Assembly: GCF_963676685.1 (NCBI RefSeq)
Contig: NC_092349.1
Coordinates: 82,522,001 to 82,586,000 of the forward strand
Direction of reading: 5' to 3'
Length of the DNA stretch: 64,000 nucleotides
Source of the DNA: Mytilus edulis
Taxonomy: Eukaryota
Part shown: piece after piece, positions 4,803 to 40,200 of the stretch
Position numbering within the stretch: the first letter of the stretch is position 1
Layout: the number at the start of each line of letters is the position of its first letter
Translations under genes and position numbers: made by a program
Notes under the pieces: model-generated
What the model was told of the DNA's origin: nothing
Databases searched by the model: none
Seen by the model: the letters and a program-made list of their open reading frames with translations, nothing else

Positions 4803-5250
4803 AGAAGGATGAGAGATACCCGAGGGACGTTCAAACTCATAAATCAAAAATAAACTGACAACGCCATGGCTAACAAAGATGAATACTAAGAGACAAAAAA
4901 TAGTACACAAACACACAACATACAAAATTAAAGGCTAAGCAACACAAACCCGGGCCACCAAAAACAGCGATGTGTGGTGCTCCGAAAGGATAGCAGATTC
5001 TGCTACACATGTGGCACCCGTCGTGTTGCTCATGTTAGTACAATGTCAAACCCGTTAATAAGTATAATTCGGTACGTCACATTCGTGCAAAGGGAACGGG
5101 ATTCTAGTTACGACACAAGGAAAATATCGGCTATCATCTGTGAAACGGATATTCCATAACAGTCAATCAACTCGTGATGGCGTCCGTAAAAATTACGACG
5201 AGATGATTTCAACTTCACCATTTGGAACTCTTGGTTTAATAGCTTCATTC
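4803..5250 (-). mobile_element. 3' fragment of the Penelope-like element family
   Basis: Reverse-complement similarity to ~19090-19515 (e.g. tccgaaaggatagcagattctgctacacatgtggcacccgtcgtgttgct). Confidence 0.7.
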
Positions 5251-5568
5251 AAGGAAATCAGGATAGTGTTATCAATAATAAAGAAATGTAACGATGCAGT
5301 AAACGATAGTTTCGCCATAATTTTATCGAAATACATTTTATATTGGAGTTTTTTATTATAAAAAAGAGAAATCTTCTGTTCAATTAGATTTAACAGGTTT
5401 AAGATACATATATATATATAACTTTATTTCCTCTATTATAGAGATTTGGTGTACATGAAATATATAAATCAGAAAATTACAAAAAACAAAGAATTAAAGT
5501 CACCGTTTAAAGTTAATATGAGAAAAAAAAATTAGCACTGTCTATAATATCGGTAACGGACACATCTT

Positions 5569-8500
5569 CTATCGATTGTAGAAATCTCTGCAGATTGTTT
5601 CAACATGACGAACACAAGTCTTAGAGAAAAAAGTTAATTCATCATTTTCTAATTCATATGACGTATTGCAAGAGAGAATTGTTGTTGTGAATTCATGTGC
5701 CGAAAGACTGTCCATATAAACACTGAACTGAATGGGATTAATGTTAATAATGTCTTCCCATAGATCATCTCTTTTGTCTTGAATAAAATCACAGGATACC
5801 AGTAAGTGTTCAACGATATTCAAGAAGAACTTTCCACATTTGTCGCAAAGTAAATGTTCATCTTCGTAGCGTACTATAGAACATAAGTCAATCACATACT
5901 TGGCGGAGACACGAAGTTCGGGAAACTGTTTCGCAATTGTCCATGCTTTATGCGGTTTGATTGCAGAATGAATATGTCTAAACATATAAAAGTCATTATC
6001 GCATGAAATTCGGTAAGACCACCATGTTTCTTCACTTGCATTTATATTCTGATTTACAATAATTGACCAAAGTTTTTTTGATGGGAAAGAACCAGTATTT
6101 GCAAAATTAACAATATAATCTGTAATGTTATATTTTTCGGCTGCTTTATAGATGTCAGGTATAAAACGAAGTTGTTCTGGAACACATTTATGTTTGAATT
6201 CCATAAGTCTGCTTATCATTATTCGTTTTGGTAACGCAGAAGACTTTAACCTACATAGTCTACCAAAAAATAAAAGTTTACATCTGTTGATAATGCTTTC
6301 AACTGAAAACCAACCTAGAAGACTTGTACACTTGTCAGAACGGGTTCGTTTTGGAAGCCCTTGAATAATTTTACACACAAATCTGTGAGATCTTTCTAAC
6401 ATCGTAAGTTCTGTTTGAGTCAAATTGTTCCATAACTCACAACCATATAGAGCTTTGCTGTAACATATTTGAAGTATTATCTTGGAACACGTCAAAGGGT
6501 TTAAAATTGATGGATGAATTCCAGAATTTAGAACTGAAAGAGCAGTTGATCGCAACACTCTACAAGCATTCAACGTCTGGTCCATTGATCTAAATTTACA
6601 GTTCAGAAGAATACCGACATGTTTGGCAGACGTCACGAGTGGTATGATGTCATTATACAAAGTTAAATTGCTTGTAACATTCTTGTTCTTCTTTGAATAA
6701 CGTAAGACGTTGCTTTTAGTCGGAGAAAACTTGAATGCCCACTTCTCGCTATATGTCTGACAAATGTTAATAAGTTGTTGCATTCCTTTTTCTGTTGTTG
6801 AGAGTAACGCAATGTCGTCGGCTTGAACAGAGCTGCTTACACTGATATCTAGAAGAACGCATCCCAATTTAGAGTCTTCAATGTCGCACAAAAGATCGTT
6901 TATGTATACTAAATATAACAGGGCGGATAAGACGCCACCTTGGCGAACGCCTCGTTTCAGTTCAAACCAACGAGATAGCCTACCATTGAACAGTACAGAA
7001 CTACGCATGTCACTGTATATTTCATCTATGAGCAGCCATAAATCACCGGTAACTCCATATTTATGTAGTTTATATAACAATGCATCATGCCATACGGTGT
7101 CGAAAGCTTTCGTGCTATCTAACAGCACAACAATAACATCACTGTTACGTTCAATATAATGACGAATCGGTTCTTGTAAGTTAAATGAAGCATGAATACT
7201 TGATAATTCCTTTTGGTATGCCATCTGAGATTGATGTGGAAACTTTATGTGCAAGGAGTCGAATCGAGGATAAAGAGACTTTTCGAATATCTTGGCGATA
7301 CAACTTGTTAACGATATACCGCGGTACGAATTGGGATCAGTTTTGTTTTTATTTCCACCTTTGAATAACGGTATAATTACACTTGTTTTCCAATCTAGAG
7401 GAGTATAACGTGTTTGTATTATTAGGTTGAATAGATTGCATAAGTGTTTTTGCAATGTTTTACCACCATATTTTATATGCTCATATGAAACGTTGTCTAA
7501 ACCTGTAGATTTGTTGTTACATAAACTTTTACAAATGTTGGAAATTTCTTCAAACTCAAATGGGTTGATTGGAGCTTTGATTTCCTTCTGCGTTTATCGT
7601 ATTTTATTCACTTCATGTTTTACCAAATTTATGTTTGCTGAATTTGTTAGCTTGCTATCAAACTGAAAAATGGATTCAAAATGGTACGCCCATGCTTCGC
7701 ATATTTCACTTTCGTTTGTATGAGTTATTCCATTTAAATTTAGTTCACGACAAAAAGTTTTCTGTTTACGTCTGCTTTTTAAGACCGACCATACATATCT
7801 TTGATCATTTTCGATAGACTCTACCATTCTGTTGGCAATGTTCATAATATGTTCGTTGTAAGCTTTATCCATTTCATTTCTGAAAGTCCGTTTTGCATGT
7901 TTGTAATCAGTAAAGAACTGATCGCTTCTATCGTGAACTTTTCCGTTCAGTATCCATAAACTGCGCTTATTTAGCATTGTTTTGTGTGATAGATCTACGA
8001 CTTTCGTCCAATAAGGCTTTATATGTTTCACAAATTGCTTATGTGGGAGTGTTTCTTTGTCAGCTTTTTGAACAGCAACTATAATAGTCTTATAGTAGAG
8101 CTCGATATCTTCATTGGTCGCTGGTAGTGACGGCATTTGAACAGACCATAAAAATTGTGAGACTGCAAATGAATAGTCATTAACTGAATTCATTTCTAAC
8201 GCTTTGGTCCACGATACTTTGTCAGCCATAACACTTTCGTATAAGTTGTCACTATCAGCACGACATTGTTCGATTAGTAAAGTACACGCGATAGGCTTGT
8301 GATCAGAAACGTTAAATATGCTTTCGTCTGGGACAAACACATTGTAAATATCTCGTGTATTTTCGTTATTTGTGACTATGTGATCTATCACTGTTTTAGG
8401 ACCATCCTCATAAGATTGAAATGTACATACCGGACCTTTGGCAAAGTCCTGAACATGTAATGATATACTGTTATTGTCAATAAGGAGACTTTCAAGACGT

Positions 8501-9021
8501 TGACTACGACGATCTTGAGTAAACGAATATCGGGGTCCACCAATCTTGCAATTGAAATCACCAAGAATATACACCGTCCCGTGGTTCGAATACGATTTGT
8601 ATGTGTCCATTAAGTATTCAAGTTCATTAACGAATGCTTCGTTGGGTTGTGTAATTGCTGGTAAGTATATAGACAGAAAAAATATACTAGGTAAATTAGG
8701 AAGTTTAAGTTCGATACCACATATCCTATTGCTATCAATTACTAATTCTGTGACATACGGAGATAAAGTTTTAGAGACCATAATCGCAACACCTCCACGG
8801 GCGCTATAACTGTATTTTTCAGGGCAGTGTTCATCGGCGCATTTTCCAAATACTAAATAGTTTTGTTTATCGATTGAATTAAGGAAGTGGAATTGTGATT
8901 TTCTAAGCCAGTGTTCAGATAAACAAATAATATCAATCTTATTATCATTTAAGAATTCTAGTAGATATGGTACTGCGGACATTATTCCGCGACAGTTCCA
9001 ACATGCTATGTTTAAAGACAT
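5569..9021 (-). CDS. LINE ORF2: apurinic endonuclease + reverse transcriptase + C-terminal zinc knuckle, split by one in-frame TAA (7594-7596)
   Basis: APE motifs WNCRG, LSEHWL, GGVAI, GDFN, IDHI, SDH; RT motifs YRGISL, LDSTKAFDTV, GVRQGGVLS, QADD; CDKC...EH...C. ORFs 7594-9021 and 5569-7455 share a frame and the gap reads *TQKEIKAPINPFEFEEISNICKSLCNNKSTGLDNVSYEHIKYGGKT. Confidence 0.93.
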
Positions 9022-10887
9022 TTATGGATGTTCGGTCTTTGTAGATAGAAAAACTGACCATGGAAGCCATTCTTTTAGAAAAATGCCTTCAGGCCAAAAA
9101 GACGGATCCCGTATTAAGGTTTCACATTGAGCATCGATATTAAGTTGTGCAGAAGCTGTTCGTCGATTTTGTTTATCAAAATATCTTAAATGTGTTACAT
9201 TAACACCTCTTGCAGCGAGATATTCACGCATAGATTCTTCACATGAATTGTGTTTGTCGATACCACCTACGTAGAATCTGGATACACGGTGTCTTGTTTT
9301 TTTAACAAATCCACGAAAATTGTCAACGGTTGTGGGATTACACATGGAAGTTGGAAAATGCACTTGTATATTTGTATTTTGTTCATTTCCAGTTATATTG
9401 TTGTTGGTGTTCTTGATTTTATTTGCTATTGAAGTAGACGAAGCTGGATTAACAATATTACTTTGTGCATGTATGTCTTTGACTAAAACGGACAGATTCG
9501 TAACATCAGAGGATCTGACGTGTTTTGTGTGTGAGTCAACTAGAGAATTGGAATGTTCATTAATGGAATTCCTTTGAATTGGCTCTTTGGACTGACTCAA
9601 ATCGGATTCGATCACATTGCAATTTTCTAATGCTTCAGCCGAAGCTTTAACTTGTTCAGATTTAGATTTTAGAATGTCTGCGTACGATTTTGTAGACTTG
9701 TCAAGGACTTTGACATCTTTCTCGGTGTTTATGATACGCTTTCGCAAATCACTAATTGACTTCGCATGAGAACAACAATCAATATTTACTTTTTTGAGTT
9801 CATCGTCAAATTCTTTCAGTTTATCACTCATGATGTTTGTCTTTGTTTTCAGACTTACAACGCCTTGCGCTCTTGTATCACTTAGCTGGTTAATTCTACA
9901 TGACTCAGATTTCACGCTTGAACGTAGTTCATTAACGTCTAGTTTTACTGTTTTAAAGTCGTTTTTTATTTTGTTTACATCTGTTGTTAACTGTTGAATG
10001 CTGTTTTCGTATTCATCCAGTTTGTTTCGGAAAGTTCCTGAACTTTTTTCAATTGCTAATTTATTTGATTTGCATGTCATTTCCGCTTCATGTGTAACGA
10101 CACTCATGTTGTTTACTGTTTTAGCTAAGTTTTCGTTGTTTTCTCGTAAGGATGAAATTTGATTCTGAAAGTTCCGTAACCGGTCATTGTTTTTCTGGTT
10201 AGCGTTGACCAGTTGCTTGTTTTCTCGTACTAATACAGATACTGTTTTATTAAGATATTCGATTTCCTGAGTGTAGTCGCCTTTCAATGTATTAATTTCT
10301 CTTTCTATGCGCACGAGAGACTCTTTCAGACACAAGTTCTGAGAAAATTCGCTGGAATGTGTTTGGTTATTTTCATCTGCTGTAGACATTTTTCGGGCAC
10401 TTTGCGTATGCGAACGAGTATTAAGTGTTAATCTTAAATCTTCCGTATATTCTCCGAGTGATGCTAAATAAAGCGCATAGCAATCGCTACCAAGTTTGTT
10501 TTCAACTGATTCACCGTTTGGTTTTCTAGGACAAAGACGCTTTTTAAGAGTTGCATTCAGATATGGAAAGTTATGTTGACATTTTGCAATTTCCAGAAGT
10601 GCGTAGCGAATGTCGTCAATTTCACAGTGAGCGTTTTGGCATTTATCAATTAATTTAGACACAAAGCTGTCTTTAGGTAAAGATAAAAGTTCTTCTTGGA
10701 TAAATTTTATTATCGATTCTGTTATGCTTGTATCGTTGCTTATGTTGCTTGTGTTGGAAGGAACATCTATTGTAATGTTAGTTTGTCTTTGTGACGAAAG
10801 AAGATCATCAAAAGGATCAAATTGGCTATCTATAAAACTCGAGTGAACAAGTAAATCGCTAGGTCTAAGTTCCGTTAGATTGTTCAT
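9022..10887 (-). CDS. LINE ORF1 (long coiled coil + C-terminal RRM-like domain)
   Basis: 621 aa intact; heptad-rich central region; C-terminal RFYVGGI...FWPEGI..KEW motif typical of non-LTR ORF1; lies immediately upstream of ORF2. Confidence 0.85.
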   Translation of the reverse strand: MNNLTELRPSDLLVHSSFIDSQFDPFDDLLSSQRQTNITIDVPSNTSNISNDTSITESIIKFIQEELLSLPKDSFVSKLIDKCQNAHCEIDDIRYALLEIAKCQHNFPYLNATLKKRLCPRKPNGESVENKLGSDCYALYLASLGEYTEDLRLTLNTRSHTQSARKMSTADENNQTHSSEFSQNLCLKESLVRIEREINTLKGDYTQEIEYLNKTVSVLVRENKQLVNANQKNNDRLRNFQNQISSLRENNENLAKTVNNMSVVTHEAEMTCKSNKLAIEKSSGTFRNKLDEYENSIQQLTTDVNKIKNDFKTVKLDVNELRSSVKSESCRINQLSDTRAQGVVSLKTKTNIMSDKLKEFDDELKKVNIDCCSHAKSISDLRKRIINTEKDVKVLDKSTKSYADILKSKSEQVKASAEALENCNVIESDLSQSKEPIQRNSINEHSNSLVDSHTKHVRSSDVTNLSVLVKDIHAQSNIVNPASSTSIANKIKNTNNNITGNEQNTNIQVHFPTSMCNPTTVDNFRGFVKKTRHRVSRFYVGGIDKHNSCEESMREYLAARGVNVTHLRYFDKQNRRTASAQLNIDAQCETLIRDPSFWPEGIFLKEWLPWSVFLSTKTEHP

Positions 10888-11138
10888 GATATATTATATA
10901 TGTTGTGAATCGCTGAAAACAGTTCACAGTGATCTGATTTTGAAAATCAATACAGTCATGTTTATGAAGTAATATCTGTAAATGTATTTAAATTCTTTTT
11001 TATCAATATGGTGTTGTTGAAAGTATGGAATGATCTCACCAAATTCTTGATCTTTGAAGATGTATGAAAACTGTCCTATTCTAGAATAATAACAAGAGCA
11101 CATTAACAGCACGTCCTTCACTAAAGGGACTGGTTTGT

Positions 11139-11806
11139 GACGGCTGCAGTGCAGGCGATTTGGTGTCACGATATCACAGTAGCATGGGTTCGAATCCCGG
11201 CGAGGGAAGAACCAAAAATTTGCGAAAGCAAATTTACAGATCTAACATTGTTGGGTTGATGTTTAGACGAGTTGTATATACATTATGTACACAGCCATGT
11301 ATCACCATCATTGATGGCGATCCGATGGATACATCTGTTGTAGAGTTGTCATTGACTCAGACGTACTTATAAATATAATTATTTTCTGTGACTGTATATT
11401 ACATTAATTTGTAGGATCCTTTACTATAGATAATTTAGCTGATCTGTAACAATAACATCTTCATGCCTTATATATCATGTACTGTAGTACGCCGCTAGAT
11501 TAAAACTGACGAGGAAAGGTAACACACGGCCATCGAAAGCTCTTTTAGTGAGAGCCCAGGTGGTCGTGTGGTCTAGCGGGACGGCTGCAGTGCAGGCGAT
11601 TTGGTGTCACGATATCACAGTAGCATGGGTTCGAATCCCGGCGAGGGAAGAACCAAAAATTTGCGAAAGCAAATTTACAGATCTAACATTGTTGGGTTGA
11701 TGTTTAGACGAGTTGTATATACATTATGTACACAGCCATGTATCACCATCATTGATGGCGATCCGATGGATACATCTGTTGTAGAGTTGTCACTGACTCA
11801 GACGTA
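11139..11806 (+). repeat. 1.5 tandem copies of a 441-bp structured unit (227-bp direct repeats at 11139-11365 and 11580-11806)
   Basis: Offset exactly 441; one mismatch seen (attgactc/actgactc); ends in (TA)n at 11805-11828. Confidence 0.95.
11554..11648 (+). ncRNA. tRNA-derived head with internal Pol III promoter (not a functional tRNA)
   Basis: A-box TGGTCGTGTGG (11561-11571), B-box GGTTCGAATCC (11628-11638) in a T-arm hairpin, long variable-arm-like hairpin; acceptor and anticodon stems poorly paired. Confidence 0.7.
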
Positions 11807-11909
11807 TATATATATATATATATATATAAATAAGCAGTGAATGGGGTTGTTTAATTTGATAGATGCTTTTGTGCTTTTTAGTTAAATATTTGTGTGTTTT
11901 TTTCTAATT

Positions 11910-12210
11910 GAGATTGTGACACATTGATGACTGCTGTACACCTTTTTTTTGACAATTTTACCTATTGTGTCTGTTTTGTTGTAAATATAATGGAATTTAA
12001 TACGACTGTCATACAAGTGAGCGGTTAACCGCTATAAAACCAGGTTCAATCAATCATTTTCTACAGTTGAAAATGCCTGTACCAAGTCAGGAATATCACA
12101 GTTGTTGTCCATTCGTTTAATGTGTTTTATCATTTGATTTTGCCATTTGACTAGGGACTTTCCGTTTTGAATTTTCCTCGGAGTTCTGTATTTTCGTGAT
12201 TTTACTTTTT
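11910..12210 (+). repeat. Dispersed SINE-like repeat (other copies ~13090-13300, ~17200-17460, ~60780-61060)
   Basis: Shared actgtcatacaagtgag...aaaatgcctgtaccaagtcaggaatat...gtgattttacttttt. Confidence 0.75.
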
Positions 12211-14133
12211 ATTATATAATATAATTTAAAGAAGAGAAATCATGACTGTAAATGAAGACTAACATACGCTACCTTAACGTATCCAATGCTTCCAAAGACG
12301 TGTTCCACGTCAGAAATAATTGTTATCACTTTAAACCTAATAATCTAAACAGCTTCTGGGCGATTGAAAGACCACAAATCAAAACTTCAGAAGAACCACA
12401 CGATATGAAGTTGAACATGTACTGGATACAGATATGATACAAAATCTATAAGATTCGTTTATGTGTACTTTGGGAAGCTTATACAAATTGCAAACCTTGC
12501 GCTGTCCAGTTGTTGTTGATGCATGTTCATTTACGACCTTTTCTTCAGTAAAAGTTAGGATATACCGTGACGACGCGTACTGGTATATGTGTGATCTCAG
12601 TTTTGGGTAATTCACTCAGTTTGTAATTAGGTAAACGACCAAACCAGCACAAGGAGCTGGTAAAGTGGTTGTATGAAAATTGCACTTGTCTCAGAATATA
12701 TTTAAATATTAAGGTATATAGGAATATTTTTTTCTGACACAAGTGCCTGTGGATATATATAAGAAAATTCAATTTAGAAAACTTATTTAAAATTCGTAAT
12801 TGCAAATAATCATATATAAATTAGATCATATATTTTTTTAGACATAACTGATTGAAATAAAAAATAAAAAAGAATGTCCGAATCATACGTCTGACATATA
12901 CTTAGATACTCAAATATTAAAATTCCTATAGAAACGAATCGATAGCATAACATTTCAAAAGAAGAAAGATACACATTTTTATGTCATGATAATTACATTG
13001 GTAATCCGTTTCATTATTTATTCAATGTGTAATAATGATGATGTTACAAGATTAAGAAATAATTCCAATTACAAAAAAACCTGAAACGTATACTGTCATT
13101 CAAGTGAGAGGTTTAGCTAGCCATAAAAACAGGTTCAATCCACAATTTTCTACATAAGAAAATGCCTGTACCAAGTCAGGAATATGACAGTTGTCATCCA
13201 TTCGTTTGATGTGTTTGAGCTTTTGATTTTGCCTTTTGATAAGGGACTTTCCTTTTTGAATTTTCCTCGGAGTTCAGAATTTTTGTGATTTTACTTTTTA
13301 TTTGTCTCTGTGTGTACTAGATTACTATTTCGTTTAAACTTAGAGATGATAAGATGAAACGTCTGGTGTCTCTATGTAATATAAAAGTCTTGAATAATTT
13401 AGCAATTTATAAAATATCACTATATAAATTGTATAATTATACATTTATAGTGAATATAATAAATTATCAATGAATTAGAGGAGTTTTATTAAATGCCAGG
13501 AATAATGCTAAAAGAGAACAAAGAAAAATAAGATTAATGATTTTCGAAAAATGTTGAGAATAATTTTATTTCATTTTCAATGAAACCCAGACGTCTGGTT
13601 GTCAGTGTTATTTCATTTGTAAATTAAATTCGTATTAAACTACGAGTAGTACAAACACATGTCCAATAAGTGCGATGGATCATTCCTATTAATTACCCAT
13701 ACTTCACGTCTTTCTGTTGTCTCCTCAACATTTCCATTCGTAAATGTATTTCGAGTTATACTCCAGAAAAATGTCTTCGTGATTTTTTTCTAATTAGACT
13801 TTCTAAACAGGCGGAAAGTCCAAATATAAGACCATGTAAACGTAACCAAATACTTGTGTAGGATTGTTTAATTAAACTCTGCTATCTTCACGACGTAAAT
13901 ATTTTCAGTTTGGGAAAACGAGAGATAACTAAAAATACTAAAAAAATCGACTACGCAGTTTTGATTAATATTTTAAAACAACTAATTAGTTTGTAAAAAT
14001 AGTGGGCATCATCAAATCATATTAATCATTGGTATACTTATATAACCTAATGCTATCGGAGTTCCAATAGATAACGAAATCCGAGAGGTGATACGTTCAC
14101 CTGTTGTAATCTCACGAAACGAAAATAAACCCG

Positions 14134-37248: not shown

Positions 37249-40200
37249 TCATATGTCACCATCCTGTCGTTCTCTTACTGCATCCTAAAATACATAAAAA
37301 GATTAATTAGTTTGGATCATAGATGCTCATCATTTTAACAAAATTATGAAATCAATACCGCAGTATGAAACATTAAACTAGAGGCTCTCAAGAGCCTGTA
37401 TCGCTCACCTGATTCTACTTGGGTTTTTGAAATCATATGAAAAAATATAAAATTTGGCTAAAAGTGACAACACAACCTCATTGATAAGGAAAGGAACATG
37501 TTTAATTTCATTCAAAAGTCCCCCACTGGCGGCCATCTTGGATGGCGGATCGGCTACAAAGTAACAACACTTGGTCAGCACCTCATAAGGAACATTCATG
37601 CCATGTTTAGTTTTATTCCATTCAGTGGTTCTCTAAAAGAAGTCATTTGTATGCATTTCCCATAGGGTCCTATGTTAAACTAAGTCCCCTGCTGGCGGCC
37701 ATCTTGGATGATGGATCTGCTACAAAGTAACAACACTTGGTCAGCACCTCATAAGAAACATTCATGCAATGTTCAGTTTTATTCCATTCAGTGGTTCTCT
37801 AAAAGAAGTCATTTGTATGCATTTCCCATAGGGTCCTATGTTAAACTAAGTCCCTGCTGGCGGCCATCTTGGATAATGGATCGGCTACAAAGTAACAACA
37901 CTTGGTCAGCACCACATTAGGAACATTCATGCCATGTTTGATTTCATTCCATTCAGTGGTTCTCTAAAAGAAGTCATTTGTATGCATTTCCCATAGGGTC
38001 CTATGTTAAACTAAGTCCCATGCTGGCGGCCATCTTGGATGATGGATGGGCTACAAAGAAACAACACATGGTCAGCACGGCATAAGAAACATTCATGCAA
38101 TGTTTGGTTTCATTCCATTCAGTTGTTCTCTAAAAGAAGTCATTTGTATGCATTTCCCATAGGGTCCTATGTTAAACTAAGTCCCCCGCTGGCGTCCATC
38201 TTGGATAATGGATCGGCTACAAAGTAACAACACTTGGTCAGCACCACATTAGGAACATTCATGCCATGTTTGATTTCATTCCATTCAGTGGTTCTCTAAA
38301 AGAAGTCATTTGTATGCATTTCCCATAGGGTCCTATGTTAAACTAAGTCCCCCGCTGGCGGCCATCTTGGATGATGGATTGGCTACAAAGTAACAACACT
38401 TGGTCAGCACTCCATAAGGAACATTCATGCTATGTTTGGTTTCATTCCATTTAGTGGTTCTCTAGAAGAAGTCATTTGTATGCATTTCCCATAGGGTCCT
38501 ATGTTAAACTAAGTCCCCCGCTGGCGGCCATCTTGGATGATGGATCGGCTACAAAGTAACAACACTTGGTCAGCACTCCATAAGGAACATTCATGCTATG
38601 TTTGGTTTCATTCCATTTAGTGGTTCTCTAGAAGAAGTCATTTGTATGCATTTCCCATAGGGTCCTATGTTAAACTAAGTCCCCCGCTGGCGGCCATCTT
38701 GGATGATGGATCGGCTACAAAGTAAAAACACTTGGTCAGCACCCCATAAGGAACATTCATGCTATGTTTGGTTTTATTCCATTCAGTGGTTCTCTAAAAG
38801 AAGTCATTTGTATGCATTTCCCATAGGGTCCTATGTTAAACTAAGTTCCCGGCTGGCGGCCATCTTGGATAATGGATCGGCAACAAAGTAACAACACTTG
38901 GTCAGCACCTCATAAGGAACATTCATGCCATGTTTGGTTTCATTCCATTCAGTGGTTCTCTAGAGGAAGTCATTTGTATGCATTTCCCATAGGGTCCTAT
39001 GTTAAACTAAGTCCCCCGCTGGCGGCCATCTTGGATGATGGATCGGCAACAAAGTAACAACACTTGGTCAGCACCTCATAAGGAACATTCATGCCATGTT
39101 TGGTTTCATTCAATTCTGTGGTTCTCTAAAAGAAGTCATTTGTATGCATTTCCCAAAGGGTCCTATGTTAAACTACGTCCCCTGCTGGCGGCCATCTTGG
39201 ATGATGGATCGGCTACAAAGTAACAACACTTGGTCAGCACCCCATAAGGAACATTCATGCTATGTTTGGTTATATTCCATTCAGTGGTTCTCTAAAAGAA
39301 GTCATTTGTATGCATTTCCCATAGGGTCCTATGTTAAACTAAGTCCCCGGCTAGCAGCCATCTTGGATGATGGATCAGCAACAAAGTAACAACACTTGGT
39401 CAGTACCTCATAAGGAACATTCATGCCATGTTTGGTTTCATTCCATTCAGTGGTTCTCTAAAAGAAGTCATTTGTATGCATTTCCCATAGGGTCCTATGT
39501 TAAACTAAGTCCCCCGCTGGCGGCCATCTTGGATGATGGATCGGCTACAAAGTAACAACACTTGGTCAGCACCTCATAAGGAACATTCATGCCATGTTTG
39601 GTTCCATTCCATTCAGTGGTTCTCTAGAAGAAGTTCAAAATGTAAATTGTTAACGACGACGACGGCGGACGACGACGGACGCCAAGTGGTGAGAAAAGCT
39701 CACTTGGCCCTTCGGGCCAGGTGAGCTAAAAATTGACCACCTGATATATGTAAAGAAAAAAAAGACACTGTCAAAGATATCTACTAATATAATTTCATAC
39801 GGTTGAACGTAGTCAATTAGAGTGAAATTATTTTCTCTTGTCTTTTTATGATGTATAGGTGTCGTACCTATCGTGTGGTCAGTTTCCCGCCAAAACAGGG
39901 GTTTTGGTCATTCAGCCTGACAGCGCCAAAGCAAGAGGTTCTCATCTAAACACTTGGTAATTTTTAATTTATTCAATAAGTCCCCTTTTTAGTTATTTAT
40001 AAGATATATAGGATTGATAGGACTTGAGGGTTGTTTTTCTTTTTGGTATTATATTGAGTGAAGTATATAGTTTCGATATGTGTTTTTGAATGTTCAGGTG
40101 TAACATATTTAATAAACATAGAAGCAGCATTGTCGTGTAGCTTCCCACTTTAATTATGAGTTTTGCATTCTTTATACTTATACAGTAAATGGTTTTTCAA

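What the first reader, a model, noticed from the sequence alone, without database searches (positions are those of the whole stretch)
5409..11828. Composite retroelement: full-length LINE fused at its 5' end to a 1.5-mer of a tRNA-headed structured RNA unit, inserted into (TA)n
Seen: the LINE 3' end (AATAAA-GT) runs into (TA)6 at 5409-5420. Its 5' leader joins with no spacer, at 11138/11139, the middle of a 441-bp unit present 1.5 times, which ends in ~(TA)12. The interrupted unit does not continue at the LINE 3' end, so the LINE did not simply insert into the repeat. The two copies differ by about one base and the LINE has only one visible lesion, so both look young. Inference: the 6.4 kb went in as one event. 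Either the repeat is a monomer-type 5' promoter module of this LINE, or the RT jumped from LINE RNA onto a circular/concatemeric small RNA and copied more than one turn. That would make it a TA-microsatellite-targeting LINE with a small structured partner RNA.
Basis: partly seen in the sequence, partly recalled or inferred. Interest (0 to 1): 0.85.

Follow-up and report, generated by a model that had tools for sequence, protein, structure and literature searches.

The report
LINE and Penelope-style repeat, joined head-to-head
A nearly complete mussel LINE retrotransposon lies 5'-end to 5'-end against a 1.5-unit copy of a very abundant, heavily transcribed 441-bp repeat that inserts into (TA)n; they are two separate mobile elements, probably laid down in one double-ended insertion, not one element with a new 5' module.

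Summary
The block at 5408-11828 is real, but it is not one composite retroelement.

**The two elements.** The LINE runs on the minus strand. The 441-bp unit runs on the plus strand, judged by its tRNA-type A/B boxes, its RNA strand and its 3' end. They meet 5' end to 5' end through 8 filler bases (11131-11138).

- The 4 other full-length LINE copies lack the unit.
- A template jump from LINE RNA would place the unit in LINE sense, and it is antisense.

**The LINE.** The (TA)6 at 5408-5420 is the LINE's own tail, present in about 29 copies. Truncated LINE copies have non-TA 5' flanks, so targeting of TA microsatellites is not shown.

**The unit family.**
- About 6,170 copies of its 3' motif occur in the genome, which implies about 3,300 arrays.
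- It sits in (TA)n, with fixed 3' ends and variable 5' ends.
- It forms inverted head-to-head pairs.
- It abuts a rare GIY-YIG Penelope-like element far more often than chance predicts.
- It is transcribed abundantly, with no fixed RNA ends.

Earlier notes of this scan describe the same family on other DNA of this genome. Only the LINE junction is new here.

**Best reading (0.55):** one double-ended (twin-priming) insertion at a broken (TA)n. **Main rival (0.33):** two sequential insertions. No empty or intermediate allele could be examined.

The parts
5408..5420 (-). LINE 3' tail, 13 nt of TA repeat following AATAAAGT
   Evidence: about 29 family copies end AATAAAGT + (TA)3.5-6.5, then unique DNA.
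5421..5568 (-). LINE 3' UTR, with a terminal hairpin (CTCTAT A ATAGAG) about 10 nt before the tail
   Evidence: There is no similarity to the 441-bp unit beyond the TA run.
5569..9021 (-). LINE ORF2: APE endonuclease (PF03372, PF14529) and reverse transcriptase (PF00078). It is interrupted by one in-frame TAA at 7594-7596.
   Evidence: It is 97-99% identical to predicted proteins of Mytilus trossulus, M. edulis and M. galloprovincialis.
9022..10887 (-). LINE ORF1, 621 aa, with only weak coiled-coil-type Pfam hits. Its TAA stop (9024-9022) is followed directly by the ORF2 ATG (9021-9019).
10888..11130 (-). LINE 5' UTR, ending at the family's common 5' start (GTCCCTTTAG...). The TTAT that precedes this start in the other four full-length copies is missing here.
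   Evidence: only 5 such 5' ends exist in the genome.
11131..11138 (.). 8-nt filler at the 5'-to-5' joint (plus strand TGGTTTGT). It belongs to neither family and holds no TA repeat.
11139..11579 (+). First 441-bp unit. The array is 5'-truncated here, starting just after the A box. It contains a B box (11187-11197), T4 runs at unit positions 244 and 405, a hammerhead look-alike core (about 11505-11560) and an A box (11569-11579).
11580..11806 (+). Second, partial unit (unit positions 1-227). It ends at the family's minor 3' end, GACGTA, running into (TA)n.
   Evidence: There is one mismatch to the first copy.
11805..11828 (.). (TA)12 at the 3' end of the unit array
   Evidence: Family arrays end in TA runs at nearly every locus.

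Best explanation
Two different retroelements lie 5' end to 5' end.

(i) A near-full-length APE/RT LINE on the minus strand (5421-11130), with its own (TA)n tail.

(ii) A 5'-truncated 1.5-unit array (11139-11806, plus strand) of a 441-bp tandem-unit, non-coding retroelement with tRNA-type A/B boxes. This family inserts into (TA)n with fixed TA-adjacent 3' ends and variable 5' ends. It is most likely copied by a GIY-YIG Penelope-like element, not by this LINE.

Most likely mechanism: one double-ended integration (twin priming) at a broken (TA)n. Each TA 3'-OH end annealed to a UA-rich 3' region of an RNA and primed reverse transcription. One side used the unit RNA. The other used LINE mRNA, whose tail is (UA)n. 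The two cDNAs were then joined 5' to 5' with 8 filler bases.

Shown: the anatomy, the orientation, the habits of both families and the unit's expression. Inferred: that it was a single event, and which reverse transcriptase did the copying.
For: Orientation and ends:
- The LINE ORFs are on the minus strand.
- The unit's A/B boxes are on the plus strand. Its RNA shows about 40:1 strand bias, read as plus strand.
- At 19 other loci the family's 5' ends vary and its 3' ends are fixed.
- The array ends at a genuine family 3' end running into (TA)12.

The joint formed when the LINE integrated:
- The LINE reaches the family's common 5' start, so the joint is not a later random break.
- The joint holds 8 filler bases and no TA.
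- Junctions made by separate insertions into a shared TA run keep TA between the elements (L008, L024, L025).
- 13 of 17 solo arrays have TA at their 5' flank.

Head-to-head pairs made in one event are a habit of this system:
- The two inverted unit arms in L026 share a private variant and meet with a 6-nt offset and no TA.
- Inverted Penelope-like fragments meet with gaps of 1-7 nt (L004, L027).
- In the coordinate list, many copies of this Penelope-like family lie as inverted pairs.

Chance adjacency is unlikely:
- The LINE shows no TA-microsatellite preference.
- Only 1 of 38 other LINE loci has an array within 1.5 kb, and it does not abut the LINE.

Substrate and precedent:
- Unit RNA is abundant (depth 1000-2400 from 6% of a run).
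- LINE RNA carries a (UA)n tail.
- Antisense tRNA/5S/Alu-L1 chimeras in mammals are attributed to twin priming (PMC13174262).
Against: - No empty, array-only or LINE-only allele could be examined. The DNA runs are about 1x and their contigs do not bridge the site.
- Target-site duplications are uninformative in a TA run.
- This is the only LINE-unit joint seen. The other four full-length LINE copies have ordinary flanks.
- No LINE RNA was seen in the two RNA runs laid.
- If the unit is copied by a Penelope-like RT and the LINE by its own protein, two machineries must have met at one break.
- The LINE's short TA run could be partly target-derived. In that case TA runs beside arrays would be plausible LINE targets.
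Confidence: 0.55

Rival explanations
1. Two sequential, independent insertions at one TA run. Either the unit array inserted first and the LINE later integrated into the TA run at its 5' flank, or the LINE came first and the array then used a TA run beside the LINE 5' end. In both orders the intervening TA was lost at the joint.
For: - TA runs in this genome are reused landing pads. Tail-to-tail and tandem neighbours share a TA run in L004, L008, L024, L025 and L027.
- The LINE has a (TA)n tail that could anneal at a nicked TA run.
- About 3,300 arrays offer many TA flanks, against about 13 (TA)>=4 runs per 64 kb.
- A Penelope-like 3' end joins an array 5' end with only TATAT microhomology in L011/L014, so TA can be absorbed at a joint.
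Against: - 17 truncated LINE copies have non-TA 5' flanks and none sits in a long TA run.
- The joint has no TA, has 8 filler bases, and lacks the TTAT found at all other full-length LINE 5' ends.
- The joint resembles single-event head-to-head junctions (L026, L004, L027) more than shared-TA junctions.
Confidence: 0.33
2. Either the unit is a monomer-type 5' promoter module of this LINE, or the RT, on reaching the LINE RNA 5' end, jumped onto a circular or concatemeric unit RNA and copied 1.5 turns.
For: - The unit abuts a (near) full-length LINE 5' end.
- Unit RNA is abundant and shows no fixed ends, so it could be concatemeric or circular.
- Genomic arrays exceed one unit.
Against: - None of the other 4 full-length LINE copies has the unit.
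- About 3,300 arrays exist without a LINE.
- The unit is antisense to the LINE, whereas a jump onto sense RNA gives sense orientation. Antisense RNA is about 40 times rarer.
- The outer end is a regular family 3' end in (TA)n, not a random stop.
Confidence: 0.03
3. The juxtaposition is secondary or artificial: a later deletion or rearrangement between a nearby LINE and array, or an assembly mis-join between two repeats.
For: - No read or contig listed bridges 11131-11139.
- Both sides are multi-copy repeats.
Against: - The LINE side of the joint falls within a few bases of the family's natural 5' end, which a random breakpoint would rarely hit.
- 8 filler bases are typical of retrotransposition 5' joints.
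- The flanks are continuous within a chromosome-scale contig.
Confidence: 0.06

Closest known systems
Twin-priming chimeric LINE insertions (Ostertag and Kazazian 2001; antisense tRNA/5S/Alu-LINE-1 chimeras, PMC13174262)
   Same: The two retro-copies are in opposite orientation and joined at their 5' ends. Each has its own 3' end at the target. The small-RNA partner is 5'-truncated.
   Different: - The host is a mussel and the LINE is an APE-type element with a (TA)n tail, not an L1 with poly(A).
- The partner is a multi-unit array of a Penelope-style element.
- The target is a TA run, so no target-site duplication can certify one event.
Penelope-like element insertion architecture (partial tandems, inverted 5'-truncated copy at the 5' end, microsatellite bias; PMC8557442)
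   Same: The unit family shows partial tandems, inverted head-to-head arms, frequent 5' truncation and (TA)n targets. It physically abuts GIY-YIG Penelope-like 3' ends.
   Different: - The unit encodes no protein and carries tRNA-type A/B boxes.
- In the window the inverted arm is a LINE, not a second Penelope-like or unit copy.
- The (TA)n bias in that paper is described for Naiads, which have an N-terminal endonuclease. The associated element here has a C-terminal GIY-YIG.
Metazoan retrozymes (PMC7229834)
   Same: [quoted passage not shown]
   Different: - No hammerhead ribozyme is detected by Rfam even at E<=10. There is only a look-alike core, without an NUH site or helix I.
- The unit is 441 bp rather than 350-390 bp.
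- It has tRNA-type boxes.
- Circularity was not tested.
tRNA-derived SINEs of bivalves, including tandem and palindromic SINE arrays (PMC11481361)
   Same: A and B boxes, no coding capacity, high copy number, and tandem or inverted arrangements.
   Different: - No cloverleaf is found.
- There is no fixed 5' end at the tRNA head.
- There is no LINE-derived 3' tail.
- The unit boundary is not set by the Pol III start and stop.
Monomer-type 5' promoters of LINEs (mouse L1 A/Tf monomers)
   Same: Tandem units lie directly upstream of a full-length LINE.
   Different: The units are antisense, absent from all other full-length copies, and form an independent dispersed family.

Membership tests
LINE with monomer-type 5' tandem promoter | The same tandem units are present, in sense, at the 5' end of other full-length copies | tested here: not met
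   4 of 4 other full-length copies start at GTCCCTTTAG preceded by TTAT and unrelated DNA. The unit here is antisense.
Template-switch LINE chimera (U6/L1 type) | The partner RNA is in the same orientation as the LINE, upstream of its 5' end | tested here: not met
   by boxes, RNA strand and 3'-end polarity, the unit's sense strand is opposite to the LINE.
Twin-priming (double-ended) chimeric insertion | Two arms in opposite orientation, joined 5' to 5', each with its own 3' end at the target | tested here: met
   the LINE tail is at 5408-5420, the array's family-type 3' end is at 11806 running into (TA)12, and the joint is at 11131-11138.
Twin-priming (double-ended) chimeric insertion | One target-site duplication or one empty site flanking the whole structure | tested here: inconclusive
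   The flanks are TA runs, so a duplication cannot be read. No empty allele or haplotig was found.
APE-type LINE | ORF2 has an apurinic-type endonuclease followed by a reverse transcriptase; copies are 5'-truncated with a common 3' end | tested here: met
   (PF03372 E=5.8e-13; PF00078 E=1.3e-27). Searches show many truncated copies with a common 3' end. The clade was not determined.
(TA)n-microsatellite-specific LINE | Copies are flanked on both sides by the target repeat, or empty sites show the repeat | tested here: not met
   the 5' flanks of 17 truncated copies are not TA repeats; the 3' TA run is short and nearly constant. Empty sites were not available.
tRNA-derived SINE | tRNA-related head with A and B boxes | tested here: inconclusive
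   The A box TGGTCTAGCGG and the B box GGTTCGAATCC are present, with starts 59 nt apart. ARAGORN and Rfam find no tRNA.
tRNA-derived SINE | Copies start at the head and end in a tail shared with a partner LINE | tested here: not met
   5' ends are scattered over the unit; there is no similarity to the LINE 3' UTR.
Retrozyme | A self-cleaving hammerhead ribozyme in each unit | tested here: not met
   no hammerhead hit at E<=10 in the window's array or at E<=0.01 in 20 loci. My own reading of the look-alike core finds no U at position 16.1 and no helix I.
Retrozyme | Tandem genomic units expressed as abundant unit-length circular RNA | tested here: inconclusive
   plus-strand RNA covers all 441 nt, reads cross unit junctions and no internal start or end was flagged. 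Tandem read-through transcripts would look the same.
Non-autonomous partner of a Penelope-like element | Penelope-type copy shapes (partial tandems, inverted 5'-truncated arm) and microsatellite target | tested here: met
Non-autonomous partner of a Penelope-like element | Physical or sequence link to an autonomous Penelope-like element | tested here: met
   - GIY-YIG ORFs (PF01541) lie next to arrays in L004, L009 and L014.
- The PLE-A 3' end abuts 4 of 19 array loci and 0 of 45 other loci, although only 215 copies exist genome-wide (about 0.01 expected).
- The elements share a terminal T-Y-A-G-R-C motif a few nt before the TA run.
- Trans-mobilisation itself was not tested.

The most novel reading that the evidence does not exclude
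A LINE mRNA with a (UA)n tail was captured as the second arm of a Penelope-style double-ended integration at a cut (TA)n. On this reading, any RNA with a UA-rich 3' end (Penelope-like RNA, the 441-nt unit RNA, LINE mRNA) can be primed by either TA end of the break. Penelope-like and LINE systems would then cross-mobilise and build heterologous head-to-head composites.
Probability: 0.25. Interest if true: 0.65.

Novelty: new member of a known kind. Interest (0 to 1): 0.4.

Why it matters
If the composite arose in one event, it is an invertebrate, non-L1 example of heterologous twin priming. It would also give a rare view of how Penelope-style integration builds its head-to-head structures: both ends of a broken TA run prime on whatever UA-tailed RNA is at hand. 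That mechanism is still undefined in the Penelope literature.

The physical link between a rare GIY-YIG Penelope-like family and the abundant 441-bp unit supports the published but untested idea that retrozyme-like tandem RNAs of animals are copied by Penelope-like elements.

If the two elements arrived separately, the locus is an ordinary nest of mobile elements at a TA run.

Tried and rejected
- **tRNA and ribozyme searches.** ARAGORN at default and relaxed settings, and Rfam up to E=10, found no tRNA or ribozyme in the unit. Rfam on 20 family loci gave only sub-threshold miRNA-like hits on TA palindromes.
- **LINE versus unit similarity.** Local alignment found nothing beyond the TA run. 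Unit versus Penelope-like 3' parts gave only the short terminal motif.
- **Empty-site search in the assembly with the left flank.** Only a self-match was found. Positions 4900-5249 belong to another high-copy repeat.
- **Own-genome search with the 100-bp unit 3' part.** It returned nothing because its words are too common. Exact-pattern counts were used instead.
- **Allele test with public reads.** The DNA runs are about 1x and held as short contigs, so no bridging piece was obtained. This says nothing for or against either model.
- **LINE clade.** The protein search gave only unnamed Mytilus proteins, so the clade is left undetermined.
- **Retrozyme paper supplements** hold no matching sequence.
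- **Origin of the 8 filler bases.** The octamer occurs nowhere else in the LINE or the unit.
Full report
**What is at the site**

The three long ORFs between 5569 and 10887 are all on the minus strand.
- ORF1 (9022-10887, 621 aa) has only weak coiled-coil-type Pfam hits.
- Its TAA stop is followed directly by the ATG of ORF2.
- ORF2 (5569-9021) carries an apurinic-type endonuclease (PF03372, E=5.8e-13) and a reverse transcriptase (PF00078, E=1.3e-27).
- ORF2 has one in-frame TAA at 7594-7596.
- In LINE sense the element ends AATAAAGT followed by 13 nt of TA repeat (5408-5420).

To the right lies a direct repeat of period 441, at 11139-11579 and 11580-11806. The two copies differ at one of 227 positions. 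The second copy runs into (TA)12 at 11805-11828.

**Orientation changes the picture**

The unit's Pol III-type boxes read on the plus strand: TGGTCTAGCGG at 11569-11579, and GGTTCGAATCC at 11187-11197 and 11628-11638.

At 19 other loci the family's arrays start at scattered unit positions. They end at fixed places. Most end at unit position about 145 (GAGTTG followed by a TA run). Some end at about 227-244 (GACGTA followed by a TA run), and this is the end used in the window. That polarity makes the plus strand the sense strand.

RNA reads agree. In two raw RNA runs the first mate lies on the minus strand about 40 times more often, which in the usual stranded libraries means plus-strand RNA.

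The LINE and the unit array are therefore antisense to each other and meet 5' end to 5' end.

**The joint**

The genome holds only five full-length 5' ends of this LINE. The other four all start at the base matching window 11130 (GTCCCTTTAG...), preceded by TTAT and then unrelated DNA.
- None of them has the unit upstream.
- The 8 bases at 11131-11138 belong to neither family and occur nowhere else in the LINE or the unit.
- The joint contains no TA repeat.

**The LINE family**

About 29 copies end AATAAAGT plus (TA)3.5-6.5, followed by unique DNA. The (TA)6 at 5408-5420 is therefore the family's own tail.

Seventeen 5'-truncated copies have 5' flanks that are not TA repeats, so a preference for TA microsatellites is not shown. 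I cannot exclude that part of the short TA run comes from the target, because no empty sites were available.

The RT part is 97-99% identical to predicted proteins of Mytilus trossulus, M. edulis and M. galloprovincialis, so the genome is a Mytilus mussel. The LINE clade could not be named. The LINE 3' UTR shows no similarity to the unit beyond the TA run.

**The unit family**
- *Copy number.* The exact 23-mer at its major 3' end occurs 6,170 times (reversed control: 0). Of these, 2,842 continue into a next unit. That leaves roughly 3,300 array ends, and some arrays have at least 8 units.
- *Target.* Both flanks are TA runs at most loci, and 13 of 17 solo arrays have TA at the 5' flank.
- *Head-to-head pairs.* In L026 two arrays lie head to head. 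The arms share a private variant and meet with a 6-nt offset and no TA, as expected if both arms were made in one event.
- *Structure and RNA motifs.* Folded as a circle, the sense strand gives -132 kcal/mol (z = -4.5 against shuffles; antisense -107.5). No tRNA or ribozyme is recognised. The CUGACGA...GAAA stretch near 11505-11560 lacks a U at the cleavage triplet and has no helix I, so I read it as a look-alike.
- *Expression.* RNA depth is 1000-2400 from about 6% of each run and covers all 441 nt. Reads cross the unit junctions and also cross the T7 run that most expressed copies carry at 11547-11548. The tool flagged no internal start or end; it flagged only the array borders. This fits concatemeric or circular RNA but cannot tell them apart. 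The LINE 5' region had no RNA in these runs.

**Who copies the unit**

Three array loci carry ORFs ending in a GIY-YIG domain (PF01541) within 1.5 kb. These are the 3' parts of Penelope-like elements with a C-terminal endonuclease.
- Family 'PLE-A' ends ...CATTCTTAGACACT followed by a TA run. It abuts arrays in L004, L008, L025 and L027.
- A second family abuts the array in L011/L014.
- None occurs in 45 other loci.
- The PLE-A 3' end has only 215 copies in 1.37 Gb. About 0.01 would be expected by chance in the 65 kb sampled.
- The sample was biased to the youngest multi-unit arrays, so the fraction cannot be extrapolated. The association itself is clear.
- In the coordinate list, PLE-A copies lie mostly as inverted pairs 1-5 kb apart.
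- Inverted PLE fragments meet with gaps of 1-7 nt.
- Both unit 3' ends and the PLE 3' ends share a T-Y-A-G-R-C motif a few bases before the TA run. The LINE does not have it.

Published descriptions of Penelope-like elements list the same features: partial tandems, an inverted 5'-truncated copy, and microsatellite bias, with (TA)n bias reported for Naiads (PMC8557442). I put about 0.75 on the unit being a Penelope-dependent, retrozyme-like element without a hammerhead.

Earlier notes of this scan on other windows of this genome reached the same reading (s1-832274, s1-834038, s1-834036). I read them only after my own analysis.

**How the composite arose**

- A promoter module should recur at other full-length copies, in sense orientation. 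It does not.
- A jump of the RT from the LINE RNA 5' end onto unit RNA would place the unit in LINE sense and give a random outer end. Here the unit is antisense and ends at a regular family 3' end.

Because the LINE side of the joint is its natural 5' end, the joint was made when the LINE integrated. That leaves two readings.

(a) *One double-ended event.* Both TA 3'-OH ends of a broken (TA)n primed reverse transcription, one on unit RNA and one on LINE mRNA with its (UA)n tail. The cDNAs were then joined with filler.

(b) *Sequential insertions into one TA run.*

For (a):
- The joint is TA-free and carries filler, like the single-event head-to-head joints of L026, L004 and L027.
- It is unlike the junctions where neighbours share a TA run (L008, L024, L025).
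- The TTAT seen at every other full-length 5' end is missing.
- The LINE shows no TA-microsatellite preference.
- Mammalian antisense LINE-1 chimeras set a precedent (PMC13174262).

For (b):
- TA runs here are clearly reused landing pads.
- TA can be absorbed at a joint (L011).
- Only one such LINE joint exists.

I could not obtain an empty or intermediate allele.

**Verdict**

It is wrong on mechanism and on partnership.

The composite is best filed as a new example of a known kind, a heterologous twin-primed or nested insertion. The unit family itself has already been noted elsewhere in this scan.

**Limits**

Noticed in passing
window 4900-5249: A fragment of another very abundant repeat (6,757 first-look candidates, 83-85% identity). 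In locus L072 the same repeat continues into an ORF with a weak RT match (PF00078, E=2e-4) that contains an FDFSTLYTSIPH stretch.
   Followed up: partly
window 11942-12211: A further high-copy repeat in the right flank, with very high DNA word depth and low RNA coverage on both strands.
   Followed up: no
window 11505-11560 (and 11547-11548): A hammerhead look-alike core (CUGACGA ... GAAA) lies just upstream of the tRNA-like head. About 80% of RNA reads carry T7 instead of the window's TTTTAG at 11547-11548, and reads run through that T-run.
   Followed up: partly
L058, L047, L052, L053 (LINE 3' ends): Some LINE copies have duplicated tail pieces. Examples are AAAGT-TAT-AAAGT-(TA)n, and in L058 a second 23-nt LINE 3' fragment with the same (TA)4 and the same flank 24 nt downstream.
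   Followed up: no
G000 coordinates listed (e.g. C1:7039891-/7044574+, C2:87680605-/87683080+, C6:74313602-/74314672+): The 215 PLE-A 3' ends lie largely as inverted pairs 1-5 kb apart with their 3' ends pointing outward. This is the classic head-to-head layout of Penelope-like elements.
   Followed up: partly
L004:1261-1345, L027:765-860, L014:1215-1296: Penelope-like 3' ends carry an extra extension of about 90 nt that ends in a second copy of the terminal motif (TTTTAGACACT or ATAGGCAC) before the TA run. This resembles the published 'tail' extension.
   Followed up: no
L024, L025, L027 (around the array 3' ends): Short inverted 3'-terminal unit fragments (40-70 bp) alternate in orientation within one TA run. 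They form palindromes that Rfam scores as sub-threshold miRNA precursors.
   Followed up: partly
window 37516-39634: A 166-bp tandem repeat, 12.8 copies, 94% matches.
   Followed up: no
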